In this document: positions 61 through 56,157 of the stretch, piece by piece
How the letters are laid out: each line of letters begins with the position of its first letter
Position numbering within the stretch: the stretch's first letter is position 1
Source of the DNA: Glycera tridactyla
Taxonomy: Eukaryota
Length of the DNA: 64,000 bases
Direction: 5' to 3'
Assembly (NCBI GenBank): GCA_965644265.1
Contig: OZ286461.1
Span: 95,604,001 to 95,668,000, forward strand
Position numbers and translations under genes: made by a program
Notes under the pieces: model-generated
Told to the model about the DNA's origin: nothing
Databases searched by the model: none
The model's input: only the letters and a program-made list of their open reading frames with translations

Positions 61-183
61 AGTGTATTCAAGTGTTGTTCCTGGATACAGCATCTTCTTG
101 ACTGTGACTGTACCAGTATCAGGATCGACGTTGAAGAATTCCATTGCTATAGTGTCCCCAATGGCTCGATATATGACACGATC
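61..183 (-). CDS. Cadherin exon 55 (short); gene continues left of the window
   Basis: tgtag|GAT..ACT|gtgagt; 123 nt; DRVIYRAIGDTIAMEFFNVDPDTGTVTVKKMLYPGTTLEYT. Confidence 0.9.
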
Positions 184-3100
184 CTACAAACAATATCACA
201 CCATGCATTCAATCAACTTGGCAGAGACCACCTCACCAGCCAGTAAAACCTCACATGGTCACCATGGTGGGCCAGGAGGCCTATTGCTAAAACATAGATG
301 CATCAGACATCTTGCTGCTGAACTCAATTTTCCTCGCACCATTTTGAGTCACATGATGAAGCTCCAAAATTTCAGGAAACAAATATCACCTTTCAAAAAT
401 CATCTCATTTGGAAATCTTTGAATTCAAATTCTTCAACTTTTCTTTGAAATAAATTTGGCGAAAGTGTGTAAATTCACAATTACTTTCACCATGACAGTT
501 GAACTTCCTAGAGGAATGTCTCTATGCAAAGCCCACCAGTCTATAATAGCCATCCATGTGGCAAAAGCAATAGTAGATGCATTTTTGCTGTGACTGTCAC
601 CTTCACAAAGGTCTTCCTGTATATCCAACACACACCATGATGAGGGGTGTTACCGGAAATCCAACCAATGCCTCTCCACCAATCAAATATTCACCAACGT
701 CCATCTTATGATGCCTGAACTTGTTTTCTCTAAATAGATAGATTTGTAACATTCTTAAATCACTCTCACATTCAATGAATATAAGCAGTCATCCTGATAT
801 GATGTGAAGATTATTAATTCTGTCAGAGTTCTTTCAGAGGATTTGAGATGAAATTTGGGACTGTAGCTCAAACTCACCCCATCTGCGTCAGTGGCTCGTG
901 GTTCGTCGGTGACAATATGACCGAGTGGTACGGTCTCCTTGATGGTGACACGCAGGGGTCCTTCATTGGCCCAGACTGGTCTGTTCTCATTCCTCTGCAT
1001 CTGGACCTCCACGGTAGCTGTGGCTGTCTGCTCAGGATAGATGTCATCGTAGGCAAGTACCCTTATCTGGATGAAATAAAGTACATTGTGAGGAACATTG
1101 ACCAGAAGGATGAAGAGGTTAGAGAGTGTCACTTGATGGTGCATGAGTCAAACACCATAGATTCAATCACTATCACGCTTACTCTTGCTATATTTCAATG
1201 GGGCATTTATTTGTCATACATAGACCGAATATCCATTGGAAAATCAAGAAAAAGAATGGATGTTTAAATCACATAAGATGAGTTTCAGATATTTTTGCAA
1301 AGTAGAATCTTAAGGCTGGATATTGAATGTAAACAGAGTAGTAGTTCTGTAGACATCTGACAGAAACTGACTCCACCATTTAAGAAATTACGGCACAATC
1401 ATTCCATCAGAATCGAAAATCAGAAGTTTATAGCAATCATGATATTTCAAGATGTCAGACCATTGGCAGTATATTTATTTTTAAAAATGTAGATAATGAT
1501 TAAATTTCTGAAAAGAATCTTTCAATTTGAGGTATAATGAAAATGAATTTGAAATATGTTCCTACAGCATGCTAGTAGAAGTTAGCAGCTAACAAGCCAC
1601 TTGCTGATGATGTTTGCTGGTACTTACCATGTAGGAGAAGGCATGGTCGGTCTTCAGATCATTCTGGACGGTGATGAGACCACTCATGTCATCAACATGG
1701 AAGAAGTACGGAGATGGGAAGTCCCCGATCAGCTGATACTTGATGGTACCCTGAAGAATGAACACACCGAAAATGTCGACATAAATGAGGTGAGTCAAAA
1801 TGACAAGGTTCACTACCCTCAGAAATCCATCGTCACCACATTCTTTCCGGTCCAACTCTCTAAACACTATCTGGGATTCAAAGTGATGAAGCCAGTTGAC
1901 TAGTGATTCATCTTACAATTCACAAAACTGAAAGCATGTCGATATGCAATCAATTGCAGCTCTGTCCATACCATATGCAATCAGATCCACTTAAAATGAG
2001 TTGTCAAAGGCTCAATATTTCTGGAAGAAATGTGATGAGTTACCTGGATATCTCTGTCTCTGGCTCTGGCTGTGAACACAGATCCTCCGACCACCTCATT
2101 TTCAGAGAGAATCGTGAAGTAGGGTTGACCCTGGAACTCTGGTAGGTACAGGTTGCGGTTGACCTTGATGGTGACCACTGCTTCCGCACTTCGCTCTGGG
2201 GTGCGATTATCACGGGCAGCGATTGTAAACTGGAATCAACGGAAAATGAAATTATAAGTGCTGATATATGAGGAATAATAGGTATCATCCAGCCAATCAT
2301 AGATACTGCAAATTTACTGTATTTGGATGTTGACTGCAAGGAGGAGACTTGGTGAGGTGAATCAATTTGCATCACATTGAAACCACAAAGGAACCATGTT
2401 CAGTACTCTCGGTTGCATCAAAAACCAATCTTCATAGAAGGGTTGCCTTTGTATGAAAGTGTTTCCTTGAGCCAGTTCGACTATATTCTCCATCTCACCA
2501 GTATTTTCCAAAATATTTCACCATGCTCTGATTGTACAGTATAATACTGCAGCCATTTAGTGATATCATTGTATGCTACAGCTGGACATCTGGTACATTA
2601 TGCACTGGATTTTGGCTGACATCTGTGAAATGAGAATCAACATGATATTCAGGTTGGCAGCTTGGAGTTGCTAACTTGGGATGGCACTGACCGCATTTCC
2701 CTAAGATGCTCAACTCAATGAAATTCTTCGATTCTTTCACCTACTAGTGAATGGGATATTTATCGGGTTTTTTCACAAACTCGTCAGAATTACCTTGGCT
2801 ATATCTAGATACCGATGCAATGGGCATGGGTGGAATTATCTGAGACTCCTACTTCTGTGTCCCCATGGGTGAGAGTTCATGAAATTCACACGATTATATT
2901 CAGTGTTACTTGAGTTAGTCAACTGACCCTGTATTGTGTAGTGCCCAGGTCATCGTTCATCAGACTCTGCTTCAGATGGACAACACCAGTATCAGGAGTG
3001 ATGAAGAAGTAGGAAATCGCAAGGGCTTCATTTGCGTCCCCATTCCATTCATACGTCAATGTATCCTGTAAAATATTGACAAATGATTTGAGTAATGCAA

Positions 3101-6100
3101 TGGAAATCACTTCTGAACAGAAATGCTGCAATCAAAAATATATCTCCTATAAACTAGTTTATAAGTGCCTTCAACAATATGCTTCAATCAGAACCCTTGA
3201 GAAAACATGATAAAGATGCCTAGCACAAATGTGTCTTCACAACTACCCACCTCATAGATAATAGATTGAATATTCTAAAGTGAAACTGCAAAAGCAATTC
3301 TCTGATCATCTCATGAAAACTATATACAACAAGAGACTGCCCTCAATGTCACCAAAAAGTGGTCTCTGAGAAGCGGTGGTCTTTTGTAAAAAGTATGACT
3401 ATGTCAAACAAGAAAGCTGCTCAGCAGAAGTGGTCTCTCCTCTGATCTGGTCTCTCATGGCAGGTTTCACTGTAACCATTGTCATGAAATGTGAGGAACT
3501 GATATGGCAAGGTGATTCAATGCTGGAAATATATGCTCATGTATAAGAATTTTAATGAAGGTGGTATAGTCCCCATGAGGTGTGGGCATTCATCTCTCAG
3601 CTCATGAAATCCCTCATAACTCAGTATGCATGAATAGGATGTAAAACTCAAACTAGCAAGCAATAAATCTTTTATGTGCATCACTCACCTGATCAGCATC
3701 TGTGGCAGTAACGGCAAGTATGTCAACACCAACATTCAGATTCTCGTTGATGGTGGCTTCATAATTGTTGTTGTTGTACACAGGCGCATTGACATTACGC
3801 AGGACAGGAATATTCACTGTGGATGTGGCAATAGCTGTGGGATTCCCAGAGTCCAGTACCGTAACTCGCATCTGAAAGAAGATGAATAATACAACATTGT
3901 TCATCTGTTCAGATAAGGTACATAACTTGACACTCTTGAGATCGATGATTTCAATTGAACTGTGTAATATCTCCATGATACTTGATTGAGAATAAGCAAT
4001 TTCTTTTCATGCACATGATCAAGTTTTGCTGTTGAGGAAGAAATGCACTGAATATCACCTCTATGACATTGACAAAGTCTAATATTCAGAAAATGAATGT
4101 AAGATTAATCTGCGTATGCTTATTTTGAGTGATATGCCTAATAGTGATGATAATAATGATAATTGTTATTTGTGTTTTGTGATTGTTGACTTACGATGTA
4201 GTATGGTGACCAATCCTCCATGAGATCTTTCTTGATGGTAATCACTCCTGTGTCTCGGTTGATCTCGAAGTATTCCGGTGTTGGTGGATCACCGATGACA
4301 CCATACTGCAGCTGGCCCTACAAACAGAACAGAAGAGGAGTGAATACAATAATGAATATCCTGTTAGACAGATCCAAATAAAGCTTCTTCCGGCAGGAAT
4401 ATAGTCATAATGCATAACATTTTGAGAACCCCAAACTGGACCTCCAAGAGATCATCAAGGACGGATTGTACCTTCCAATGTGCAAACTCAGTTCTTACCA
4501 TAGGATCTCAACAATGACAATAGCAAATGAATGTACAATGCTATAAGTTAATTGACCAATTGGGAATTTGTAAAAGTTCTCCATGAGACTATATATAGTT
4601 CATGTGATCTGATTGAATTCCTCTATAATGTCGGACAGCCAGACTTGGCCTAGGTATGATCTGTAAATAAACTACTAGAGATATCTAGCAGTGACAATAT
4701 TTTACCTTCTGATCCATGTCTCTCCCACTGACAGTGAAGACTGTGGATCCAACAGGTCGATCCTCTGGCACGGTCGGTGCATTGTAAGGGGTTTCAACAA
4801 ACTCTGGTTCATATTCATCTCTCAGGATGTTGATCACCAATTCACGCATAATTGACTGAGATGGGATACCAGAATCTACTGCTTCCACATTCAACTGAAA
4901 GCAAAAGTGAAGTGCCATCAATGTTACAATTATATTAAGTCAATTTCTCTGAGGTTGCAAAGGAAAGTTTTTCAAGGTGTTGAGTTGCAGCTAATATTCT
5001 TGAATGTTTTGTAACAGGGATGGCTTCCCCTTTCTTATTCTCACACACTTAAGATAGGGAATATGTGGTGGAGAATTCTGCACAAGTTTTCACTATTCTC
5101 TAGAGTCTGCTTTTTCAAACAGAAATCAATTATCCTAACAATTTTTACTCTTCCCATGAAATCCCTGAAATGGATTCGGTGAATGTTTTCTTTTTCCAGG
5201 AAACAGAACTACCTGCTGCAATCAGAAGTTGACATTCATAAAACATCTACATTATGGTCTGTGTATGGTGATTTGCCATTGATCTTAATCTTTCACTTTT
5301 GTAATAAAATTGACAAACAAGCAAATATTTGTTATTTGTCTGCTATAATGAACATGCTACTGAAGATTTTTGAAACTCCATCCTACTTTACTCCATAACG
5401 ATTGACAATCACACGCCCAAACCTCCTATGAATACTCCTCATATCCGAAGATATTGATCATCAAACATGACATATGTCCAATAGGATGCCATTCCAAAAC
5501 TCTGAATGCCTCCAACATACACATCCTGACTTTCGAAAGAGCATCAATCAATACATGGAATTTCAATTCAGAATCAGTATGCTATGTTTGACCACATAGT
5601 GCATGCAACAATCTGACCCTCTCTGACATCTTCTTTTCAATCAGATGCCAACATGCAAGATTCAACACATAATCCTTTTGGGTGAACCAAAATATGACAA
5701 ACCAATAGCCAAAACACCTGGAAGACTGTCTTTGCTGCAAGCCACTTCATTTGGTCTACTGCAAGATATTGTATTAACTGAGGTATAGCATTATACTGTA
5801 TATTACCCTGAATTCCTTCGTATCGGACTCAGTCAAGAACCTCTTGGTGGTGATGACTCCTGTGTCAACATTGAGGAAGAAGTACTGCAGTGCCTCATCT
5901 TCCACTTCATTCCTCAAATAATACTCTACAGTGTCCTGAAAAAAAATCCATCATCATTTGAAAAGTGCAAATTCTCACAACAAGAGTTGGAACATGGGGT
6001 GGAGAGACGACCAACACTCTCATTACCATATCACTTTAGGGCAACTTGTGGTCAGTATTTCTTCAAAAGTGGCCCCCTGCTGATGAAAGATGCATCATAA

Positions 6101-51100: not shown

Positions 51101-54100
51101 GATCAGTGACAATCATCACAATCTGAATGGATACCGATTAGAATATACAGCTAATGGTCATATATTTTGACAATTAATAACTGAAAATAGAATTGCGATC
51201 ATTTTTGACGTACCTAACATAAAGAAAAAGTTGTAGGGGGTTGGCAAACATTTTCTTGGTTGTAATTGAACTGAATACCCTGCCATACTTTGCATATGGC
51301 AATTGAGTGGTTTCACTCAACAAGTTATAGCTTTTGACCACAACTTTCCACACAATTTTCAATCAATCTTGTAACCTTATTGACGATAACATCATAATAC
51401 AAGGCGTTGTTCTCATTCCAATATATATCGATTTGGAAGCATTTGTGGTGACCTGATGATTTGTAAGATTAGTTTAGTAAAACCTCTTTTGTGAGATCCC
51501 TCTTTTGGGAGACTGCCCTCTTTTGAAAGACTGCTTCTCAGTGGTTCCTTCCTATTTCACACTGTGAAATATACCTGCAATGAGAGATCACCTGTCCAGA
51601 GACACTGCTTGTGGATGGTATTTGGGGCAGTGCTACGAAAGAGGTTTTACTGCATAGTACATACATTCAAATCATATAGTCCCCATCGTCACCACAGCTA
51701 CCTCATCTAAAGAAGGATGCTCACCATTCTATCATCATCTCGTCCTCTCAAGGTGAAGATCATTCTCCCAACGGGATCTGTTTCCTTAATGGTCACTCGA
51801 TATGGTATGCTCTCAAATATCGGCGGTTGTAAATCACGCTTGACCCGTATATAGGCCAATGTTGTTGTATTTTTTCTTGGTGAGCCATTGTCTGAGGCCA
51901 TGATATTAAACTGAAAACAAAAATGGATGAAAACAGATAAAATTCACCGAACAAGTGTATTAAATTCATGATTCTTGACAGTACAAGTAACAGATGAGTG
52001 GCCCATCCATGAGAACAGTCATTACATATTATCTCAATATCTTCGTATGTATCAGCAATTATTGCAGAAGGCATTACAGATGTATAATGGCATTTTAATG
52101 ATATCCAAGTGTTCTGACTATTAGAAGACAAAAGAATGATTCCAGAGTAACCAAATCAGTGTGATTTGAGATTTCTTGAATCAAGGCCAATGCAATTCTT
52201 TCTCTCTATCTTCATTATACTATGTGATCAGTGGTGAATAGTCACTAGAATTTAGCAGTTTTGAAGTTTGAAAACATCTCAATTTACACATTATGGCATT
52301 GTTTACATTGTTGTTCTGATGATGATGTTGGCGCTCTAGCCACACTCCTGCAAATATCATGTGCAGATAGCTAGGCTGGAATATAAATCTGTATCACCCT
52401 GGCAAGGTGATACAGATTTTGTCATCAGAGAATGATGATATGGCCACTTTTTCTGCTGTTATCACATCCTTAGCTATCATCTCATCTTCAATCAGGTATG
52501 ACTTATAAATCAGCATGGTTGTTTCAAATGTGACTACAATATATTCTGTATTGGGAAGGAACAAGGTCCTGTGTCATGGGATTATGATGGACACTGTGAC
52601 GTTCTATGCAACTAACTATGCTACCATGAAGCTGCCAGTGATGACTGGGTAACAGAAACCTACTCTGTAATCCACCCGATCCTCCTCTGTGAGCATACTG
52701 GCTAGATACAGCACACCAGTGTAAGGATGAAGATAGAAGAATGATGTCTCGGGCAACTTCTCTACAATTGCATACTCAATAACATCCTACAACACAAGCA
52801 CCATCAATTAATCAAAGGTCCTAAAACGATGAAATCTGATGGATGAAAAATTCATAAATAAGTAAATTCTAAAGAATATTCAGATGAAACAAAATGGTTA
52901 GATATATTCAATTCCAGTCATTCTGTGCATGGTCATCACTTGCTAATCCATCCCGATCCTGAAAGATTATGAACACTTCAATGCAGCTATTAGCTATTTT
53001 GTAGTTGATTTGCGGTAAATAATTAAGGCGCCACTGCTAACCTTGCACTGTTGTTTCAGATATCAGACATATGCTCACACCATCAACCAGCACTAATCTT
53101 GTAGCTGTATCTATATGGTTCATGGATGCAGGCAGCTCTAACAACACCCCTGTCATGATCAGCCTGCTCAAACCTAGCTGCAGCAGCACCCTTCTTACTT
53201 TTGAATGAAGATGCTACCACAACACATGTACACCCAAATAGTCACTAATTTTCAAACACCAGCTATCAGTGACCGAATATGATTGTGACAATCTTGAATC
53301 TATGATGAATACATGTGAGATCTCCCTGGAATTGTTGAATGAACCATCTTATTTACTGAAATGAAAATTGAAAAGAAAATCATCCTCATTGAAGCAGAGT
53401 GAGTGATCAGAAGTAATTGCACCTATATGAATATGTATCATCTATGATGTGACACTGCATCACAAAAGTCTGTTATTTGAATCAGGTGTGACTTGGGGAT
53501 GTGTGAAAGCAAGAAAGTAATGACATCCATCTCCCCAAAACCTGAATGAAAAAATATCGATCGAGATCTCGTTAAAAAGTAATTACAATCTGGTTCAAAG
53601 TTAGTGGGTGAATAAAAATGCTTCAAGGTTTTCAGTATCTAACAAATTGGAAATCTATAGTATAACAAATAGCATTATTACACAAAAGTGAAGAATTGAA
53701 GTGTAGATCTGGGAATTTGGAGATAGAGGGAAACATAGGAAAGCAGAAATGACTTATTTAACTTCTTGTAGTATCGAATTGAGGTAAGAGATTGTGCTTG
53801 ATAATCTCAGGTGTTCCTAGTGAAAGCTAATTGACTACATCAAATCTAAAGCAGATCATGTGAAGGGAATTGTTATTTGAGGATTATCATGAGAACGATT
53901 CACTCACATTCAATGGCCCATCTCCAATCAGCTAAAAGCACAAAAACCTAAAGACTAAGTACTATGCTCAATTGAGAGCTTCTACACTGAATGAAGGACA
54001 CATTTCGGAAGATCTTCTCCAGGTACTGTAGTTTCCTGAATGAAAACTCAAAATGACATCAATACAAGCATTCTCATTAACCTCACCATAAGTATAGGGA

Positions 54101-56157
54101 AACACAGCATATCTTAGTAGATATGTAATATATATACACCGATTATATAGTATTTATCAATTACTTCCTCAATTTACAAGTTGAACTTAGAGTAAATCAT
54201 CTTGTCTTCCTCATCGCTATAATAATTCATACAATCTGTCATATGAATTTTCTTCTATCAGCGGATGAAATGCACTGCAAATACTGGTCAATTCTGTGGT
54301 TTGACTGGGTATTCCATTCTCTGCATTTGCCACTACCTTCATCAAATCCATGGTACCATATCATCTTGATGACTTCACTGTTGATGCTCTCCTAGGCATG
54401 GTGTAGCTAAACTGATGGAACATAACACTGAAAACATTTCTGAACCAATTATCTGCCTATCAGTACTTATATCGGATCTGGGTGAACTGCACCTACCTGG
54501 TCCTGGTCTGTGGCTGTAACTGCAAGGAGACTGGTGCCAACTGCTGATGTTTCCGGCAGGTTGTCAACTCGGTACTCACTCTGTGAGAAGCGCGGCTGGT
54601 ACTCATTACGACGTACTGTCACATTTACAACAGTATTTGCATACTGAGTAGTGACCTCAAACTCTCGCTCTGCTTCCACATAAATCTGTGAATGAACACC
54701 ATAAGTGAGAACATCACAAATTGATTTCTTCTATATTCTGTAATCGGTGCAGAAATTGCATATTCATCAACAAGCTCAGCTTGATATGTGCCACAGCAAC
54801 ATTATGCATTATCATTAAATCCATGCTTAAAGATGATGGTTCTGACTAGCGACATAAAATAAGGAGTTCAGGATTCTGGATCACAAATGTGAATGAGATT
54901 ATGGTAATTCACAGCATAGTACCCTCAAGCGGTCCATCCTGCTTCACAAACCATCATCAAATATCCTGGCCTGCAGGATCGGCAGATAAGTGAAGAACCA
55001 CTGTTACCAGAGACCACTGCTTGTTCTCATCAGGGGCATATGCACTATGTCCAGAATAATGTTCATGAAGGTAATCGAATCAAATAGAGGCAGTTTTTTC
55101 TGATATCATCCATCAAAATAGTTCCCCAATAGCAGCCATGGAATTACAAATTTCCATCAATAGAATGGCAGTAATGACCCTGAATGTCTGAGAACAGTAC
55201 CGACACACTAATCACAAGAAAAGCAATACAGAAATGCCTCATACTCACCAAATAGTATGCACTTGCACTGGGGTCATTTTTGACTGGGTTCCTGATACGG
55301 ATGCTTCCTGATTCGGCTTCAATCGAGAAGTAATCCTGTGCAGTAACTGTGCCTGTTATGCTGTACCTTGTCCCATCCTGCAATGATTCAAGGAAAACAA
55401 ATTACTGTTGAAGTTCATGAAACAGTGTGTTTAAGATGAGAAGTTTTCAGAGGAACCATCAGACCTTCTTGTCAGTTCATCGCAAATACATTGTTACATT
55501 GTCACATGACCTGGTAGTTAGGAACAGATTGCATGCCTTGGTGAGTATCTCTGAGTATATATCAGCTGGATATTGTAGAGGCCCCAATCCATGTTGAGTA
55601 TGTAATCCTCAAAGCAATTGTTGGAACCAATTGGCCTCTTTGTATAGAACTGTGACCTGATAGAATTACTGCAAGGTATATACTTTGAAACTTGTTAATA
55701 GATAGCATCAGGCAGATACATGCCTTGAATTGTGATGAAAAAAAAAATGCTACACAACAGTATGAAAAGAGAATGAAAAGAGTAGCTTGATCAGCTACTC
55801 TCCATCAATGTTCACTGGGTGTCAGGAGGAATCCCTCCTGAGAGTATCTTATCTGGGTATCAAGTCGGTTGAATGGGTATTGGTTAGGCTTGGTTTGATT
55901 CAAAATCGAAAGGGAAAGATCTTGGAGCTGACATACAGTCATACAGTAAATTCTGACACATTCTAATAATGAATACATACACTTGGGGATGCTGTCACGC
56001 GTACCACCTCAGTATTTATCTCCTTATTCTCTGAGATTGTTGTAGCGTAGGAACTAGTTGAGAATCGTAATTCACCCCGATCACGGACCACCTCTACCTC
56101 CACAGTAGCCTCTCCTGTCTTTTGCGGGAAACCTTGATCAACTGCCTGAACTCGGAC
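61..56157 (-). CDS. Giant non-classical cadherin (Fat/Cdh23-like size class), partial: 55 exons, ~2,970 aa, ~28 EC repeats
   Basis: 55 segments bounded by AG/GT on the minus strand, each a multiple of 3 nt with no stops. They carry recurring cadherin motifs (PxF..Y...xE, AxDxD, Y.I...F.I...G.I, AxDxGxP). No signal peptide, TM or cytoplasmic part seen, so orthology cannot be assigned. Confidence 0.93.
878..1066 (-). CDS. Cadherin exon 54 (long)
   Basis: tccag|ATA..GGG|gtgagt; 189 nt; IRVLAYDDIYPEQTATATVEVQMQRNENRPVWANEGPLRVTIKETVPLGHIVTDEPRATDADG. Confidence 0.9.
1628..1750 (-). CDS. Cadherin exon 53 (short)
   Basis: ttcag|GGT..ATG|gtaagt; 123 nt; GTIKYQLIGDFPSPYFFHVDDMSGLITVQNDLKTDHAFSYM. 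Confidence 0.9.
2044..2229 (-). CDS. Cadherin exon 52 (long, gamma)
   Basis: tccag|TTT..CAG|gtaact; 186 nt; FTIAARDNRTPERSAEAVVTIKVNRNLYLPEFQGQPYFTILSENEVVGGSVFTARARDRDIQ. Confidence 0.9.
2928..3065 (-). CDS. Cadherin exon 51 (short)
   Basis: tacag|GAT..AGG|gtcagt; 138 nt; DTLTYEWNGDANEALAISYFFITPDTGVVHLKQSLMNDDLGTTQYR. Confidence 0.9.
3333..3472. mobile_element. Tc1/pogo-type MITE, left-truncated (same subfamily as 49933-50123)
   Basis: Shares 'aatgtcaccaaaaag(t/c)ggtctct...gactatgtcaaa...gcaggtttcactg|ta' with 49933-50123. Confidence 0.7.
3689..3871 (-). CDS. Cadherin exon 50 (long)
   Basis: ttcag|ATG..CAG|gtgagt; 183 nt; MRVTVLDSGNPTAIATSTVNIPVLRNVNAPVYNNNNYEATINENLNVGVDILAVTATDADQ. Confidence 0.9.
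4195..4317 (-). CDS. Cadherin exon 49 (short)
   Basis: tgtag|GGC..ATC|gtaagt; 123 nt; GQLQYGVIGDPPTPEYFEINRDTGVITIKKDLMEDWSPYYI. Confidence 0.9.
4706..4894 (-). CDS. Cadherin exon 48 (long, gamma)
   Basis: ttcag|TTG..AAG|gtaaaa; 189 nt; LNVEAVDSGIPSQSIMRELVINILRDEYEPEFVETPYNAPTVPEDRPVGSTVFTVSGRDMDQK. Confidence 0.9.
5807..5935 (-). CDS. Cadherin exon 47 (short)
   Basis: ttcag|GAC..AGG|gtaata; 129 nt; DTVEYYLRNEVEDEALQYFFLNVDTGVITTKRFLTESDTKEFR. Confidence 0.9.
6061..6324. repeat. Minisatellite, 6 x 44 bp
   Basis: Unit cttcaaaagtggccccctcctgatgaaagatgcatcataaatat, near-perfect copies. Confidence 0.95.
6446..6631 (-). CDS. Cadherin exon 46 (long)
   Basis: tgcag|CTG..GGG|gtaagt; 186 nt; LKVIAYDTTYPDNQATGTATITVIRNPNAPVFDPAGVYEATIDEKFDLGEVVMQVTATDQDG. 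Confidence 0.9.
6735..6887. other. Assembly gap
   Basis: N run. Confidence 1.
6962..7090 (-). CDS. Cadherin exon 45 (short)
   Basis: ttcag|GGT..CTT|gtaagt; 129 nt; GEIKYMIVGEYPAQDFFSVHEDSAEVRIKKSLVEDSLRAPTYL. Confidence 0.9.
7658..7855 (-). CDS. Cadherin exon 44 (long, gamma)
   Basis: tgaag|ATT..GTG|gtatgt; 198 nt; IDLQVSDQSAPEKTALTRVIVTISRDLEAPAFTNSPYTAEIEEDTAVDSVIGLSPGPLRATDGDLV. Confidence 0.88.
8859..9423. mobile_element. Non-autonomous DNA transposon (hAT-like CAG termini), CpG-rich
   Basis: 17-bp TIR cagtgtgtaaaattaac / gttaattttacacgctg (1 mismatch); subterminal ggcccg/actggcc motif clusters; flanks agacag / aaacat. Confidence 0.8.
10277..10432. repeat. Tandem duplication, 2 x ~82 bp
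   Basis: 'tctcaagataatatgaagt..cactgagttttaatca.agatctctacctca' occurs twice, 82 bp apart. Confidence 0.85.
11280..12520 (+). mobile_element. Decayed DIRS/Ngaro-like retroelement relic (RNase H end + tyrosine recombinase)
   Basis: Frame-broken motifs in the expected order: CLAYNITFFKSHI (~11.55k), NGVPSPDSHPQMSLILKAIHR (~11.7k), KEDISF (~11.93k), IQHPKSHSD...SCCHLLSQFILLQP (~12.06-12.17k), GIMDRSVKNL (~12.44k). Judged by eye only. Confidence 0.45.
14486..14611 (-). CDS. Cadherin exon 43 (short; not in ORF track)
   Basis: ttcag|GAT..GAT|gtatgt; 126 nt; DDVLSYSIIGSESSMEYYYVNPETGEITLKKLLTDGTSISDD. Confidence 0.88.
15155..15337 (-). CDS. Cadherin exon 42 (long)
   Basis: cacag|CTA..GAG|gtgaga; 183 nt; LPVTVYDTGRPQKTATATYTASISRNENTPQFNQPEYRVTINDLWDLGQHIVTVTATDQDE. 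Confidence 0.9.
15769..15897 (-). CDS. Cadherin exon 41 (short)
   Basis: tgtag|GGT..AAG|gttggt; 129 nt; GQLKYDLIPSVPATEIFYIHPDTGQIRLKSTELLQADAAFEYK. Confidence 0.9.
16654..16836 (-). CDS. Cadherin exon 40 (long, gamma)
   Basis: tgtag|TTT..CGG|gtaagt; 183 nt; FEVMVSDQGIPERTAKTWVMVIFIEDSMPTFDNLPEEQVVSENIVHDAVVYDVNARDNDQR. Confidence 0.9.
16878..17036. mobile_element. Tc1/pogo-type MITE
   Basis: TA|cagtcaaacctg...caggttcgactg|TA; internal ggtggtct(t/c)ta repeats. Confidence 0.85.
18280..20450 (+). mobile_element. Decayed DIRS/Ngaro-like retroelement relic, interrupted by a MITE
   Basis: TDALGYGG (~18.31k, RNase H-like); TDQCL...EHEFDA*FLHGNFLRFNQIV (~19.49-19.63k, YR box I-like); IIVDGVLL (~19.94k); HSNSRKIG...IRNSEFLLNIR (~20.33-20.44k, resembles the HSFRIG...GRWxSxAFxxYIR terminus). 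Judged by eye only. Confidence 0.5.
20090..20250. mobile_element. Tc1/pogo-type MITE (family of 16878-17036)
   Basis: cagtcagaccggtctataaagac...gagcagattagactg|ta; clearly similar to 16878-17036. Confidence 0.8.
20488..20686. mobile_element. CAGT-ended MITE with 6-bp target-site duplication
   Basis: CAGAAC|cagtgtcgg...ccgacactg|CAGAAC; internal gagaca(aa/tt)tgtc / tgtctcacatttt repeats. Confidence 0.8.
20712..20831 (-). CDS. Cadherin exon 39 (short)
   Basis: tgtag|GAT..AGG|gtgagt; 120 nt; DVMLYSIVESPPITDLFFLNPSTGVLSLKRVWPGEDTEYR. Confidence 0.88.
21411..21596 (-). CDS. Cadherin exon 38 (long, lacks AxDxG)
   Basis: ttcag|TTA..GGG|gtaagt; 186 nt; LMIKATYTGVSAHDAICYVDITVTRNEKSPQFTQGEYRYEILEYFPLGESILQVSANDEDEG. 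Confidence 0.9.
22141..22361. mobile_element. Tandemly duplicated partial Tc1/pogo-type MITE abutting the exon 37 donor
   Basis: Two copies of 'ttatatgaaggccacctg.atacagaggcca...caggtctga.t...ataatgatatgagtacttac'. Confidence 0.75.
22362..22490 (-). CDS. Cadherin exon 37 (short)
   Basis: tacag|ACT..AAG|gtaagt; 129 nt; TDIIYEVVGTSNAPDYFSVERQSGEVKIKADIRNDPSDVTFYK. Confidence 0.9.
22848..23024 (-). CDS. Cadherin exon 36 (long, second delta module)
   Basis: ggcag|GTA..GGG|gtaagt; 177 nt; VRVRATDDGAIPKTSTAVVEVRVVRDEGDLRFSQETYTAEVSENQNVGSTITTVRASPG. Confidence 0.9.
23551..23611 (-). repeat. Short interspersed repeat fragment (family 2)
   Basis: Reverse complement aligns with 37451-37512 (tgggg.ccct..ttc.gtta....gttagcga...ttag.tgcaa.tgaacagcctgcag); weaker pieces near 4981-5030 and 48320-48570. 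Confidence 0.65.
23978..24109 (-). CDS. Cadherin exon 35 (short)
   Basis: tgtag|GCT..GGT|gtaagt; 132 nt; APNNVVSYSIIGDGDAPAYYYVHPTDGVITLLQSVYESEHREFG. Confidence 0.9.
24205..24308 (+). mobile_element. Helentron-associated (HINE/DINE-1-like) element 3' end with (TACG)n microsatellite
   Basis: ~12 TACG units, then aaactataatacaccgcttttttcaaaagcggggtataaaaa containing the hairpin ccgctttt-ttc-aaaagcgg; related motif at ~57781-57810. Confidence 0.6.
24855..25040 (-). CDS. Cadherin exon 34 (long)
   Basis: tacag|TTG..GCT|gtaagt; 186 nt; LRILAQDGGTPPKTSTATLLIDVDRNLAQPRFSQDVYQAEIPEILPAGSTVSQVTATDEDTA. Confidence 0.9.
25770..25904 (-). CDS. Cadherin exon 33 (short)
   Basis: tccag|GAA..ACT|gtaagt; 135 nt; EPFNIVSYEMIGDDSGPSYFKLEDNGDIKVRAGVNLPADTETSYT. 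Confidence 0.9.
26545..26739 (-). CDS. Cadherin exon 32 (long, beta7)
   Basis: gacag|TTT..CGG|gtaagt; 195 nt; FEAMAYDLGGIHALNSSNRASLNIIVKRDQNAPQFQGTPYYKRIAQDQPEEQIFFTVQATDVDDR. Confidence 0.9.
27082..27219 (-). CDS. Cadherin exon 31 (short)
   Basis: tgcag|TCA..CAT|gtaagt; 138 nt; SPYNEVRYLLVGEAGILQYFMIDAVTGEISLKKSVLDDPNEPDNYH. Confidence 0.9.
27644..27829 (-). CDS. Cadherin exon 30 (long)
   Basis: tccag|ATT..AAG|gtaagt; 186 nt; IRIEAADGGTPPLKTMSLLQVHVNRNLNPPVFANTNYEKEILETQALGLPFTQVSASDSDTK. Confidence 0.9.
28874..29005 (-). CDS. Cadherin exon 29 (short)
   Basis: ttcag|ACT..CAG|gtagga; 132 nt; TPFNVIHYAIIGDDSAPTYFRVDPEKGEVKTQREINNDYETDYQ. Confidence 0.9.
29130..29291. other. Assembly gap
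   Basis: N run. Confidence 1.
29733..29924 (-). CDS. Cadherin exon 28 (long, beta6)
   Basis: tacag|ATA..GCG|gtgagt; 192 nt; ITVLARDMGVPESRLGQSSRVVVNVIRNTQTPQFIGTPYRKNVTEDISVDTLVYTVRAEDRDAA. Confidence 0.9.
30570..30887 (-). CDS. Cadherin exon 27 (fused long+short, 106 codons)
   Basis: tacag|CTA..ACG|gtaatg; 318 nt; LRVMVQDGGVPPCAVTSVATVNVNRNLFSPRFVQSEWTEEIMETHPLTEPILTVTAEDQDDK-VPHNTIRYEIEENSQYGDRFLLDPVSGQLFLRRTLVGETSIQYT. Confidence 0.9.
31342..31476 (-). CDS. Cadherin exon 26 (short)
   Basis: tgcag|AAT..CAG|gtgatt; 135 nt; NTPFRELSYSLLGDDQGPTFFSIEAETGIIRVKTDLRSDDEIQYQ. Confidence 0.9.
31994..32185 (-). CDS. Cadherin exon 25 (long, beta5)
   Basis: tccag|ATT..CAG|gtgagt; 192 nt; IVVSAHDLGFPELVSPDSATVTVRVQRNNNCPQLQGEPYVAAIDQTKAMNSEVIAIQAVDFDPQ. 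Confidence 0.9.
32365..32697. mobile_element. CAGT-ended MITE with 6-bp target-site duplication
   Basis: TGCAAT|cagtcttc...gaagactg|TGCAAT; subterminal cactctccc/gggagag repeats. Confidence 0.8.
32902..33039 (-). CDS. Cadherin exon 24 (short)
   Basis: ttcag|GCT..ACA|gtaagt; 138 nt; APYNEIRYQITASEKALEYFLINEMTGEIYIKKPLSEDDPEVSSYT. Confidence 0.9.
33407..33592 (-). CDS. Cadherin exon 23 (long)
   Basis: ttcag|ATT..AAG|gttagt; 186 nt; IRVMAEDGGDPMKTATATVAVNVNRNQFAPIFNPQRLDRNILEDHPLGVAIADVNATDEDTK. Confidence 0.9.
33978..34109 (-). CDS. Cadherin exon 22 (short)
   Basis: tgcag|GCC..ACG|gtaggt; 132 nt; APFNKVTYRIIGDNKASSLFRINSDSGDINLNTSLTADSDITYT. Confidence 0.9.
34859..35047 (-). CDS. Cadherin exon 21 (long, beta4)
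   Basis: tgaag|GTT..GAG|gtaaga; 189 nt; VRIQAYDGGDPARASTEAEVDISIGRNWFAPEFQRTPYQTTIRESLSVGSSVYSVTTNDRDAE. Confidence 0.9.
35648..35785 (-). CDS. Cadherin exon 20 (short, two Cys)
   Basis: ttcag|TCA..AGT|gtaagt; 138 nt; SPYNLLTYGITGTEAAMECFAINEISGDVVLRQSLLLEPCLEEAYS. Confidence 0.9.
36503..36688 (-). CDS. Cadherin exon 19 (long)
   Basis: ttcag|ATC..AAG|gtgggt; 186 nt; IRANVADRGIPARSNTTTVRVKVNRNFNDPVWQQSQYEANINEGITLGTSIVRVSATDADRK. Confidence 0.9.
37100..37231 (-). CDS. Cadherin exon 18 (short)
   Basis: ttcag|GGT..ACG|gtgaga; 132 nt; GPFDTLAYSIIGDDLAPTYFGISSVSGDISIKRNLEETSIEEFT. Confidence 0.9.
37451..37512 (+). repeat. Short interspersed repeat fragment (family 2)
   Basis: Matches the reverse complement of 23551-23611. 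Confidence 0.65.
37879..38073 (-). CDS. Cadherin exon 17 (long, beta3)
   Basis: tatag|GTC..GAG|gtatgc; 195 nt; VDVQATDGGTPPKNSPSQARVTIQVTRNMFTPSWEGNLPYETTVNENQDINTKIFEVQATDADPE. Confidence 0.9.
38563..38700 (-). CDS. Cadherin exon 16 (short)
   Basis: ttcag|GCA..AGT|gtaagt; 138 nt; APYNVFTFAITGTELGQEYFMIDKNTGQISVKKGLSLDPERRTTYS. Confidence 0.9.
39044..39229 (-). CDS. Cadherin exon 15 (long)
   Basis: tgtag|GTT..AAG|gtgtgt; 186 nt; VRIMAYDGGTPARSDTSVVSVKVQRNLNAPQFSPAEYEVNILETQQLGVPFTQVRATDEDQK. Confidence 0.9.
40105..40236 (-). CDS. Cadherin exon 14 (short)
   Basis: gacag|GAA..AGG|gtaatg; 132 nt; EPYRFIRYVVIGDDTAPVYFSVGELSGEVTLKASVNGDTETDYR. Confidence 0.9.
41013..41207 (-). CDS. Cadherin exon 13 (long, beta2)
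   Basis: ttcag|CCA..GCT|gttagt; 195 nt; PFSILATDLGKNPRTSREPARVTINVERNEHTPLFQQEPYFKEINRDAPTDTSIATVSATDQDEA. A second AG 8 nt further in is out of frame, so the acceptor is slightly less certain. Confidence 0.85.
41572..41715 (-). CDS. Cadherin exon 12 (short)
   Basis: ttcag|GAG..GGG|gtgagt; 144 nt; EPYNVVRYEIQENSDPKILEYFKVDPQTGILYLLKSLRLDSSGIKQYG. Confidence 0.9.
41892..42077 (-). CDS. Cadherin exon 11 (long)
   Basis: tgcag|CTT..AAG|gtatga; 186 nt; LRVLAKDGGVPAQTATATAKVEILRNFHDPVFNPRDYSQTILETYDIGVSILQVSADDEDTK. Confidence 0.9.
42543..42674 (-). CDS. Cadherin exon 10 (short)
   Basis: tgcag|GGT..ACG|gtaagt; 132 nt; GPFSQVNYSLIGDDAATTFFEIVYNQGQVRIKQDLSTENEDFYT. Confidence 0.9.
43266..43457 (-). 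CDS. Cadherin exon 9 (long, beta1)
   Basis: ttcag|GTG..CCT|gtaagt; 192 nt; VHVYATDTGYPPRNSTNTARVQVLVTRNRLSPVFTLSDYEASVEETRPVGSMVLDMIARDDDPP. Confidence 0.9.
43836..43964 (-). CDS. Cadherin exon 8 (short)
   Basis: ttcag|GAT..CGG|gtaaga; 129 nt; DSVIYTMSNTSSEAAEDFFYVNPTTGVLTLARSLAETSMADFR. Confidence 0.9.
44241..44263. repeat. Poly-C (23 nt; G-run on the sense strand)
   Basis: Directly visible homopolymer. Confidence 0.95.
44377..44559 (-). CDS. Cadherin exon 7 (long)
   Basis: tccag|CTC..CAG|gtatat; 183 nt; LTAIVYDDVNPDSFATANLTITVKRNENPPRFENSDRTITIPEIQAVGSTISTVTATDRDQ. Confidence 0.9.
44891..45043. other. Assembly gap
   Basis: N run. Confidence 1.
45151..45306. repeat. Minisatellite, ~3 x 53 bp
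   Basis: Unit tgaaattacaataaatatgaactactcgaattccaaaagccaata(t/c)(g/a)agtta(c/t). Confidence 0.92.
49933..50123. mobile_element. Tc1/pogo-type MITE with an internal G18 run
   Basis: TA|cagcgaaacatgcga...tcgcaggtttcactg|TA. Confidence 0.8.
50840..50962 (-). CDS. Cadherin exon 6 (short; not in ORF track)
   Basis: ttcag|GGA..ACG|gtaagt; 123 nt; GALKYEVIGTVPAPYFFEVRRDTGEVFISNDLMSDITFDYT. Confidence 0.9.
51475..51652. mobile_element. Related MITE (older copy)
   Basis: TIR tagtaaaacctcttt / aaagaggttttactg; internal gagactgc/gagatcacc repeats. Confidence 0.7.
51725..51910 (-). CDS. Cadherin exon 5 (long, gamma module)
   Basis: ttcag|TTT..ATG|gtgagc; 186 nt; FNIMASDNGSPRKNTTTLAYIRVKRDLQPPIFESIPYRVTIKETDPVGRMIFTLRGRDDDRM. 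Confidence 0.9.
52664..52786 (-). CDS. Cadherin exon 4 (short; not in ORF track)
   Basis: tgtag|GAT..AGA|gtaggt; 123 nt; DVIEYAIVEKLPETSFFYLHPYTGVLYLASMLTEEDRVDYR. Confidence 0.88.
54497..54685 (-). CDS. Cadherin exon 3 (long, lacks AxDxG)
   Basis: cacag|ATT..CAG|gtaggt; 189 nt; IYVEAEREFEVTTQYANTVVNVTVRRNEYQPRFSQSEYRVDNLPETSAVGTSLLAVTATDQDQ. Confidence 0.9.
55249..55377 (-). CDS. Cadherin exon 2 (short)
   Basis: tgcag|GAT..TTG|gtgagt; 129 nt; DGTRYSITGTVTAQDYFSIEAESGSIRIRNPVKNDPSASAYYL. Confidence 0.9.
55981..56157 (-). CDS. Cadherin exon 1 (long, delta module)
   Basis: tgcag|GTC..AGT|gtatgt; 177 nt; VRVQAVDQGFPQKTGEATVEVEVVRDRGELRFSTSSYATTISENKEINTEVVRVTASPS. Confidence 0.9.

What the first reader, a model, noticed from the sequence alone, without database searches (positions are those of the whole stretch)
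878..56157. No canonical calcium linker in 28 repeats: DxNDN replaced by a near-invariant R-[N/D] motif
Seen: 27 of 28 linkers read x-R-[N/D]-x-x-x-P or equivalent (21 RN, 6 RD; e.g. KRNENPP, NRNFNDP, LRDEYEP). None reads DxNDN, and no LDRE/LDYE motif is present in the short exons. The xE, DxD and AxD motifs are mostly kept. Established: canonical linkers bind three Ca2+ through xE, DRE, DxNDN, DxD and AxD, and site 3 relies mainly on the linker Asn, DxD and AxD. Inference: sites 1 and 2 are lost and site 3 may remain. An Arg conserved across otherwise divergent repeats could substitute for a cation by salt-bridging the retained xE glutamate, giving a partly Ca-independent rod.
Basis: partly seen in the sequence, partly recalled or inferred. 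Interest (0 to 1): 0.75.

Follow-up and report, generated by a model that had tools for sequence, protein, structure and literature searches.

The report
Arginine-type linkers in a giant cadherin
The window holds 28 of about 76 repeats of one giant, expressed cadherin gene of an annelid, in which the usual three-calcium joint between repeats is replaced by a conserved arginine-asparagine joint; this joint type marks a whole family of giant cadherins in molluscs, brachiopods, nemerteans and annelids and has not been characterised in any paper I could find.

Summary
The window holds 55 phase-0 exons of one minus-strand cadherin gene. Of its 28 linkers, 27 read x-R-[N/D] (21 RN, 6 RD), none reads DxNDN, and there is no LDRE. 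The xE, DxD and AxD motifs are kept. The three N gaps lie in introns as assembled. RNA-like contigs confirm all eight splice junctions that I tested.

The window is only a third of the array. The gene has about 76 such repeats (Arg in 71 of 74 complete linkers). They are flanked by canonical DxNDN repeats and followed by a membrane helix and a conserved tail. The genome is an annelid by mitochondrial gene order.

The same linker marks a family of giant cadherins in gastropods, bivalves, Lingula, a nemertean and Octopus. The published octopus cadherin with 77 EC domains appears to belong to it.

Site-3 ligands are kept at 93-97%, while D67, D100 and D103 are lost. Across 851 repeat pairs of relatives, the Arg co-occurs specifically with the two acidic residues that normally bridge sites 1 and 2. 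AlphaFold2 predicts a confident but non-canonical orientation of the two repeats, whereas a canonical control fits solved structures. Calcium stoichiometry and the Arg-Glu distance could not be measured.

The parts
61..56157 (-). Part of one giant cadherin gene: 55 phase-0 exons, 2969 codons, 28 EC-EC linkers. The gene runs on beyond both ends of the window.
   Evidence: Exon model with AG/GT at every end. Pfam PF00028 Cadherin. Gene extent. Eight introns confirmed by spliced contigs.
55981..56157 (-). A exon, linker VRDRGEL. It has R-D but no Pro, and the next DxD is replaced by SPS. Hinge-like; all three calcium sites look lost.
54497..54685 (-). A exon, linker RRNEYQP
51725..51910 (-). A exon, linker KRDLQPP
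44377..44559 (-). A exon, linker KRNENPP
43266..43457 (-). A exon, linker TRNRLSP
   Evidence: splice ends confirmed
41892..42077 (-). A exon, linker LRNFHDP
41013..41207 (-). A exon, linker ERNEHTP
39044..39229 (-). A exon, linker QRNLNAP
37879..38073 (-). A exon, linker TRNMFTP
36503..36688 (-). A exon, linker NRNFNDP
34859..35047 (-). A exon, linker GRNWFAP
33407..33592 (-). A exon, linker NRNQFAP
31994..32185 (-). A exon, linker QRNNNCP
30570..30887 (-). Fused A+B exon (intron lost), linker NRNLFSP. The only 106-aa continuous stretch; used for the Pfam and PDB searches.
29733..29924 (-). A exon, linker IRNTQTP
27644..27829 (-). A exon, linker NRNLNPP
26545..26739 (-). A exon, linker KRDQNAP
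24855..25040 (-). A exon, linker DRNLAQP. The only linker in the window with D at position 100.
22848..23024 (-). A exon, linker VRDEGDL. No Pro, and the next DxD is replaced by SPG. Second hinge-like linker, 18 repeats after the first.
21411..21596 (-). A exon, linker TRNEKSP
16654..16836 (-). A exon, linker IEDSMP. The one linker of 28 without Arg.
15155..15337 (-). A exon, linker SRNENTP
7661..7855 (-). A exon, linker SRDLEAP
6446..6631 (-). A exon, linker IRNPNAP
4706..4894 (-). A exon, linker LRDEYEP
3689..3871 (-). A exon, linker LRNVNAP
2044..2229 (-). A exon, linker NRNLYLP
878..1066 (-). A exon, linker QRNENRP
61..55377 (-). 27 short B exons (40-48 aa, strands C-E), one between each pair of A exons. 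They carry L-x-x-D in place of LDRE.
6735..6887 (.). Assembly gap inside the intron 6632-6961
   Evidence: not filled and not looked up
29130..29291 (.). Assembly gap inside the intron 29006-29732
44891..45043 (.). Assembly gap inside the intron 44560-50839

Best explanation
The window is the middle third of a giant type-I membrane cadherin of an annelid, with roughly 85 EC repeats in all. About 76 internal repeats are joined by a derived, selectively maintained linker, x-R-[N/D]-x-x-x-P, in place of D-x-N-D-N-x-P.

Shown:
- The gene model and its transcription.
- The near-invariance of the Arg.
- The loss of D67, D100 and D103.
- The retention of the site-3 ligand set.
- The presence of the same syndrome in a family of giant cadherins across Lophotrochozoa, including a 7530-aa Octopus protein.

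Inferred:
- Each joint keeps one calcium, at site 3, which is the highest-affinity site in canonical linkers.
- The guanidinium of Arg101 replaces the cations of sites 1 and 2 by pairing with the retained xE glutamate and with the Asp at the E-of-DRE position.
- This latches the two repeats in a fixed orientation that differs from the canonical one.
- The long internal filament therefore depends much less on calcium concentration than a canonical cadherin, while the canonical repeats at both ends stay calcium-dependent.
For: - Exon model, motif counts and alignment.
- Spliced contigs, one of 22,735 nt.
- All six Arg codons are used.
- R occupies this position in 3.4% of 3698 linkers of other giant cadherins, against 96% here and 75-85% in the family.
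- Ligand table (site-3 residues 93-97%; D67 position 7% acidic; E69 position 73% acidic, mostly Asp).
- Specific covariation of R with xE(i) and position 69(i) (OR 3.5 and 3.4), null for the same positions in repeat i+1 (OR 0.77 and 0.83), and only weak for site-3 ligands.
- AlphaFold2 model of an RN-type pair (pLDDT 95, pTM 0.82). It fits no solved pair above TM 0.61, with rmsd 5-8 A.
- The canonical control fits at TM 0.80-0.91, rmsd 1.4-3.5 A.
- Site 3 has the tightest affinity in CDH23 EC1-2 (5 uM): PMC7547225.
- Motif-to-site assignments: PMC8691648 and PMC5120219.
- The gene's own N- and C-terminal repeats are canonical (DMNDNSP, DINDNSP, DENDFTP, DINDMDP, LDRE).
Against: - No ion was modelled and no coordinates were available, so neither occupancy nor the Arg contacts were seen.
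- The covariation counts repeats that are related by duplication and by descent, so its p-values are overstated. Only the internal controls protect it.
- E at position 103 in about 26% of linkers, together with the retained xE, Asp69, D136 and the backbone carbonyl of residue 101, could still hold a second calcium.
- The AlphaFold2 model is of a Haliotis relative chosen to have all the motifs, not of the annelid protein. AlphaFold2 ignores ions.
- xE is acidic in only 77-79% of joints and position 69 in 73%, so the proposed latch cannot be complete in every joint.
Confidence: 0.5

Rival explanations
1. Two-calcium joint. Sites 2 and 3 are both occupied and the Arg replaces only the site-1 cation, as in the known two-calcium linkers of PCDH15 EC3-4 and mouse PCDH24 EC2-3.
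For: xE, the acidic residue at position 69, D136 and the backbone carbonyl of residue 101 all remain. E stands at position 103 in 19 of 74 linkers. Two-calcium linkers are documented (PMC8691648; PMC7547225).
Against: D103, which normally bridges sites 1 and 2, and D67 are both missing in most joints. In the known two-calcium linkers D100 and D103 are kept (DXPDL, DGDDL). Glu is replaced by the shorter Asp at position 69, which would suit a new partner more than the old ion.
Confidence: 0.25
2. Fully calcium-free joint. The conserved DxD, AxD and N/D102 residues are kept as hydrogen-bond or salt-bridge partners of the Arg or for folding, and no ion binds.
For: Calcium-free linkers are widespread (Drosophila N-cadherin, PCDH15 EC9-10, LI-cadherin). 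The predicted orientation of the two repeats is non-canonical.
Against: In documented calcium-free linkers DxD and XDX are also degenerate (PCDH15 EC9-10: AIN and DSL). Here they are kept at 93-97%, and stay about 90% conserved even in family joints that lack the Arg. The two joints of this window that did lose DxD (55981-56157, 22848-23024) look different from the rest.
Confidence: 0.12
3. The Arg-Asn pair is conserved for a reason unrelated to the calcium sites, for example contact with a partner or a neighbouring molecule in a lattice, or processing. The joints are simply weakened canonical linkers.
For: In canonical linkers the residue at this position gives only its backbone carbonyl to calcium, so its side chain could in principle point outward (established structures; my own knowledge).
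Against: The covariation is specific to the two acidic residues of the same joint. R, N102 and the loss of D100 and D103 travel together as one syndrome in every family member. No N-x-S/T or dibasic pattern is conserved around the Arg.
Confidence: 0.08

Closest known systems
Octopus giant cadherin with 77 (over 70) EC domains, high in suckers (Albertin et al. 2015; Wang and Ragsdale 2017, as cited in PMC6062618 and PMC6339937). Its likely counterparts here are Octopus sinensis LOC115211772 (P0266, 7530 aa) and the fragments P0008 and P0015.
   Same: P0266 has the same plan: a few canonical N-terminal linkers (DKNDNPP, QNNDNPP, LVNDNAP) followed by a long run of x-R-N-type linkers (33 strict RN among 65 detected). 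It scores with the mollusc RN family, well above the Fat, CDH23 and Dachsous types.
   Different: It is only about 30% identical to the annelid protein. The Arg is less strictly kept in Octopus (about half of the linkers, with many K or Q). The papers describe it as a cephalopod novelty and, in the parts I could read, say nothing about its linkers. That P0266 is the published gene is inferred from its size and species, not shown.
Mollusc, brachiopod and nemertean proteins auto-named 'protocadherin Fat 4-like' (for example Haliotis rubra XP_046564129, Patella vulgata XP_050391949, Lingula anatina XP_013411494, Tubulanus polymorphus XP_074647699, Biomphalaria, Aplysia, Elysia, Saccostrea, Solemya, Mya, Pinctada).
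   Same: 60-90% of their linkers are RN-type, with the same loss of D67, D100 and D103 and the same retention of xE, DxD and AxD. Six members with a complete C-terminus share the tail motif ..YVPPDE.VQ..GEIN..F ... NP.Y with this gene.
   Different: About 30-34% identity. None of them has been characterised. The name Fat 4 is an automatic label: no EGF or laminin-G domains were seen in the two members scanned.
Known non-canonical cadherin linkers: two-calcium PCDH15 EC3-4 and EC2-3, two-calcium mouse PCDH24 EC2-3, calcium-free PCDH15 EC9-10, Drosophila N-cadherin EC2-3, LI-cadherin EC2-3, and the partial linkers of Fat4 and Dachsous.
   Same: They show loss of part of the XEX / DRE / DXNDN / DXD / XDX ligand set, with consequences for stiffness and shape.
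   Different: Those are single joints within otherwise canonical chains and have no conserved replacement residue. Here one replacement motif with an invariant Arg is used about 70 times in series and is conserved across phyla. The best structural match of the predicted pair is CDH23 EC12-13, at only TM 0.61.
Canonical giant cadherins (Fat, Dachsous, CDH23, CELSR)
   Same: Genuine PF00028 EC repeats. The best sequence matches in the PDB are CELSR1, clustered protocadherins and CDH23.
   Different: Canonical linkers have D at position 103 in 76%, D67 in 81%, E69 in 81%, and R at position 101 in about 3-4%.

Membership tests
Cadherin superfamily (EC repeat, Pfam PF00028) | A sequence match to the EC-repeat profile above the curated cut-off | tested here: met
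   The fused exon 30570-30887 scores 35.7 bits against a cut-off of 28.8. Relatives score 955-1065 bits with 25-31 stretches.
Cadherin superfamily (EC repeat, Pfam PF00028) | Tandem EC repeats with the seven-strand fold | tested here: met
   76 A and 75 B exons in strict alternation. The AlphaFold2 model of a family pair is all-beta, with two times seven strands and pLDDT 95, and reaches Z 15-16.6 against solved EC pairs.
Cadherin superfamily (EC repeat, Pfam PF00028) | Canonical three-calcium linker motifs (XEX, DRE, DXNDN, DXD, XDX) | tested here: not met
   Within the array, DXNDN and DRE are absent while XEX, DXD and XDX are kept. The motifs are met only in the terminal repeats of the same gene.
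Lophotrochozoan giant cadherins with R-N linkers (family defined here) | The majority of linkers read x-R-[N/D]-x-x-x-P, with D67, D100 and D103 lost | tested here: met
   71 of 74 linkers in this gene. 44-90% in about 50 relatives, against 8% or less in about 140 other giant cadherins of the first search, with the later searches giving the same split.
Lophotrochozoan giant cadherins with R-N linkers (family defined here) | A single membrane helix followed by a short tail with YVPPDE..GEIN..F and NP.Y | tested here: met
   Membrane-helix exon near G000:C7:95525459-95525806. Last exon at 95523016-95523204, 65-82% identical over about 25 aa to six relatives.
Lophotrochozoan giant cadherins with R-N linkers (family defined here) | Canonical N-terminal repeats ahead of the R-N array | tested here: met
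   This gene. P0090, P0015 and P0266.
Fat / Fat4 atypical cadherins (the automatic name of the relatives) | EGF-like and laminin-G domains between the ECs and the membrane; canonical linkers predominate | tested here: not met
   No EGF or laminin-G family was found in P0031 or P0005, nor in the precomputed Pfam lists of the RN family, whereas true Fat proteins list PF00008, PF02210 and PF00054. The annelid gene's own membrane-proximal exons were not scanned against Pfam.
   I saw only that the N-terminal repeats are canonical. The tail motif matches the RN family, and I know of no PCDH15 motif that it resembles.

The most novel reading that the evidence does not exclude
A previously undescribed class of cadherin joint has one calcium at site 3 plus an arginine latch in place of sites 1 and 2, with its own fixed geometry between repeats. 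It is used about 75 times in series to build filaments of 60-85 repeats, the longest cadherins known. The shape and stiffness of these filaments are largely insensitive to calcium, while only the canonical tip and base repeats remain calcium-gated. The family is ancestral to Lophotrochozoa, so the octopus 77-EC cadherin is not a cephalopod invention.
Probability: 0.35. Interest if true: 0.75.

Novelty: new variant of a known kind. Interest (0 to 1): 0.62.

Why it matters
Cadherin mechanics are thought to rest on three calcium ions per joint. Exceptions have so far been single joints that act as hinges or elastic elements. Here a single alternative joint, with an invariant arginine, is the rule for about 75 consecutive repeats and is conserved across at least four phyla.

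If the arginine really stands in for two of the three ions, it is a natural experiment in building a long extracellular filament that does not need high calcium. It could also serve as a template for engineering calcium-independent cadherin rods.

The result also places the 'largest cadherin', noted in octopus suckers, within an old family. That family has equally large or larger members in snails, bivalves and annelids, all currently mislabelled as Fat 4-like.

Tried and rejected
1. Octopus origin. The many single-exon protocadherin-like ORFs on contig C10 and the '77 EC' literature suggested an octopus. I rejected this because identity to the Octopus proteins is only about 30% and the mitochondrial contig has the annelid gene order on one strand.

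2. Species identification by COX1. The gene has 12 TGA codons under the bacterial code, and the pieces are too short for the length window of the word search. I dropped this. Default ARAGORN found no tRNA; the mitochondrial mode in a script did.

3. Arg-to-Glu distance. I used fold-level comparison with a matched canonical control instead.

4. The annelid protein itself could not be folded or sent to long-protein searches, because a spliced sequence has no reference. Relatives stood in for it.

5. Literature. Albertin 2015 (PMC4795812) and Wang and Ragsdale 2017 are not held. Searches for an arginine or guanidinium replacement in cadherin linkers, and for lophotrochozoan giant cadherins, found nothing relevant. 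The library is incomplete, so this is weak evidence of novelty.

6. A simple N-glycosylation or furin-site reading of R-N was considered and dropped. No N-x-S/T or R-x-x-R pattern is conserved around it.

Full report
**What is in the window.** The minus strand carries a perfectly regular series of short exons. Profile searches of all six frames found 28 copies of a roughly 62-residue exon type ('A') and 27 of a roughly 43-residue type ('B'), in strict alternation. Every one of the 55 exons has a polypyrimidine tract with an AG acceptor, has a GT donor, and starts and ends in phase 0. Together they encode 2969 residues.
- An A exon encodes strands F-G of one EC repeat, the linker, and strands A-B of the next repeat up to DxD.
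- A B exon encodes strands C-E.
- One pair is fused (30570-30887).

That 106-residue stretch passes the Pfam Cadherin cut-off.

**The observation.** Of the 28 linkers, 21 read R-N and 6 read R-D. One has no Arg (16654-16836, IEDSMP). Two of the R-D linkers (55981-56157 and 22848-23024) lack the Pro and also the next DxD. No DxNDN-like string occurs, and no LD[RYF]E; there is one LDPE. The xE glutamate is present in 24/28, the DxD aspartates in 26/28 each, and the AxD aspartate in 26/28. The A exons are on average only 32% identical to each other, yet the Arg is one of five nearly invariant columns. The three gaps each lie inside an intron as assembled, and the splice sites on both sides are intact. 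I did not fill them or look them up. Whether a gap hides an entire extra repeat remains open.

**Transcription.** Contigs of four public runs from one study (coded organism A, RNA by guess) were laid on 37800-43500. They cover the nine predicted exons and skip all eight introns at the predicted bases, with GT..AG on the minus strand. One contig is 22,735 nt long. The gene is therefore expressed and spliced as modelled in that stretch.

**The whole gene.** The window is G000:C7:95604001-95668000. The same exon types continue on both sides, giving about 76 A and 75 B exons from 95542012 to 95700194.

In 74 complete linkers:

| Position | Finding |
|---|---|
| 101 | Arg in 71 |
| 102 | N or D in 71 |
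| 100 | D in none |
| 103 | D in 2, E in 19 |
| DxD | kept in 68-69 |
| AxD | Asp in 72 |

In the B exons the LDRE motif is replaced by L-x-x-D. The position of the first Asp is acidic in 7%. The position of the Glu is acidic in 73%, mostly Asp. The Arg is encoded by all six codons, from both the CGN and AGR families, which argues for long-standing selection on the residue.

Upstream of the array, about eight repeats have canonical motifs (DMNDNSP, DINDNSP, DENDFTP, LDRE, LDYE). Downstream there are canonical repeats again (DINDMDP, IDRED), then a membrane helix and a last exon ending ..YVPPDEPVQESGEINMNF..VNPIYQR. The protein is a type-I membrane cadherin of roughly 85 repeats in which only the internal array uses the R-N joint.

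**Organism.** The 15,366-bp contig C207 is the mitochondrial genome. All its genes are on one strand, in the order cox1-N-cox2-D-atp8-Y-cox3-Q-nad6-cob-W-atp6-R-H-nad5-F-E-P-T-nad4L-nad4-C-G-M-rrnS-V-rrnL...nad1-I-K-nad3-S-nad2. By my own knowledge this is the conserved annelid order.

**Relatives.** A profile of the 28 A exons was searched against 1.8 billion representative proteins. It found thousands of cadherins, but only 11 of the best 150 had mostly R-N linkers. These come from Haliotis, Patella, Bulinus, Potamilus, Lingula and the nemertean Tubulanus, plus two unnamed entries.

Word searches starting from two of them added about 40 more, all from molluscs. Among these are 6,800-7,900-residue proteins of Elysia, Nucella, Gigantopelta, Plakobranchus, Ylistrum, Pinctada and Mya, and a 7530-residue protein of Octopus sinensis. 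The two unnamed entries repeat the order of linkers of the Octopus protein, so they are probably Octopus bimaculoides fragments.

The distribution is bimodal. Family members have 44-90% strict R-N linkers, and among the best 150 of the first search the other giant cadherins have 8% or less. Six family members with complete C-termini share the tail motif of the annelid gene, which makes this one gene family rather than convergence.

The literature held here mentions an octopus cadherin with 77 (over 70) EC domains, high in suckers, and lists it as a cephalopod novelty (PMC6062618; PMC6339937). The Octopus protein found here is very probably that gene. If so, it belongs to a family that predates cephalopods.

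**What the joint probably does.** The standard assignment is as follows (PMC5120219 and PMC8691648):
- XEX and DRE come from repeat n.
- DXNDN is the linker.
- DXD and XDX come from repeat n+1.
- Site 3 uses the first Asn, the backbone carbonyl of the last Asn, DXD and XDX.
- In CDH23 EC1-2, site 3 is the tightest site (5 uM, against 44 and 71 uM; PMC7547225).

In the R-N joints every side-chain ligand of site 3 is kept at 93-97%. The residues that belong only to sites 1 and 2 (D67, D100, D103) are gone. The two bridging acidic residues, xE and position 69, are kept in about three quarters of joints.

I tested whether the Arg is tied to these two residues, using 851 consecutive repeat pairs of the mollusc, brachiopod and nemertean proteins:

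| Residue tested | With Arg | Without Arg | Odds ratio |
|---|---|---|---|
| xE of the same joint, acidic | 81% | 56% | 3.5 |
| Position 69 of the same joint, acidic | 58% | 29% | 3.4 |
| xE one repeat further on (control) | 75% | 79% | 0.77 |
| Position 69 one repeat further on (control) | 54% | 58% | 0.83 |

The site-3 ligands stay near 90% with or without the Arg. The repeats are related to each other, so the p-values are inflated, but the internal controls make a general 'decayed joint' effect unlikely. This is the pattern expected if the Arg pairs with those two carboxylates.

**Structure prediction.** I could not fold the annelid protein, because a spliced sequence has no reference. I used a Haliotis two-repeat fragment with an alignment of 60 R-N pairs.

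| | R-N pair | Canonical control (60 DxNDN pairs, first row from Nematostella) |
|---|---|---|
| AlphaFold2 confidence | pLDDT 95.2, pTM 0.82 | pLDDT 96.1, pTM 0.83 |
| Foldseek against the PDB | best TM 0.61 (CDH23 EC12-13), typically about 0.5, rmsd 6-7.7 A | TM 0.80-0.91, rmsd 1.6-3.5 A, for dozens of solved pairs |
| VIA-align | Z 15-16.6, rmsd 5.1-7.9 A over about 200 residues | Z 18-21, rmsd 1.4-2.8 A |

The R-N pair is therefore predicted to be rigid, but with a relative orientation unlike any solved pair, the calcium-free ones included. The tool gives no coordinates, so the Arg contacts, the tilt and the twist are unknown. AlphaFold2 also models no ions.

**Verdict.** The joint type is a trait of a large, uncharacterised lophotrochozoan family, of which one member, the octopus gene, has been noted in print for its size only. 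I found no paper that describes the linker, though the library is incomplete and the two key octopus papers are not held.

Noticed in passing
G000:C7:95523016-95730663 (window = 95604001-95668000): The gene spans about 200 kb or more. It has about 76 R-N repeats, about 8 canonical N-terminal repeats, canonical membrane-proximal repeats, a membrane helix and a short tail. With roughly 85 EC repeats it exceeds the 77 reported for the octopus cadherin.
   Followed up: partly
window 55981-56157 and 22848-23024: Two near-duplicate linkers (VRDRGELRF and VRDEGDLRF) lack the Pro, and the next repeat has SPS or SPG in place of DxD. They lie 18 repeats apart and are candidates for fully calcium-free hinges. 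The neighbouring B exons also pair up (55249-55377 with 22362-22490, 52664-52786 with 20712-20831), which suggests an 18-repeat block duplication.
   Followed up: partly
G000:C7:95561763-95603343 (below the window): In the C-terminal half, R-N and R-D linkers alternate, together with alternating 'AYDS..P..Q' and 'ASDQ..PE' F-G strands. This points to a two-repeat unit of duplication.
   Followed up: no
window 14486-14611: This B exon ends ..TSISDD instead of the usual ..Y-x. Its donor (GTATGT) fits, but the exon was not covered by the RNA check, so the true 3' end may differ.
   Followed up: no
window 42826-42868: A 43-base piece inside an intron is held at high depth by other contigs of the four runs, with unrelated sequence on both sides. 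It is probably a short dispersed repeat that is transcribed elsewhere.
   Followed up: no
window 41127 (also 40169, 40171, 42009): The contigs differ from the assembly at a few exon bases. T>C at 41127 (A>G on the mRNA strand) is seen in three of four runs. It could be an allele or RNA editing; no DNA run of the same animals was available.
   Followed up: no
G000:C7:95703399-95705291 and 95710470-95711570 (minus strand, in introns of the 5' part of the gene): There are open reading frames of 631 aa (reverse-transcriptase-like, judged by eye from its motifs) and 367 aa (of unknown kind), which look like inserted non-LTR retrotransposon sequence.
   Followed up: no
G000:C207 (15,366 bases): Complete mitochondrial genome with the conserved annelid gene order on one strand. 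trnG appears between trnC and trnM instead of before cox3.
   Followed up: partly
G000:C10, about 11-111 Mb: There are dozens of single-exon cadherin ORFs of about 900-1000 aa spread along one chromosome. This is a protocadherin-like expansion in an annelid, reminiscent of the octopus and vertebrate expansions.
   Followed up: no
P0266, P0262-P0269 (relatives): Giant members of 6,800-7,900 aa exist in gastropods and bivalves as well as in Octopus. The octopus cadherin with over 70 EC domains, listed in a review as a cephalopod novelty, therefore has equally large relatives outside cephalopods.
   Followed up: partly
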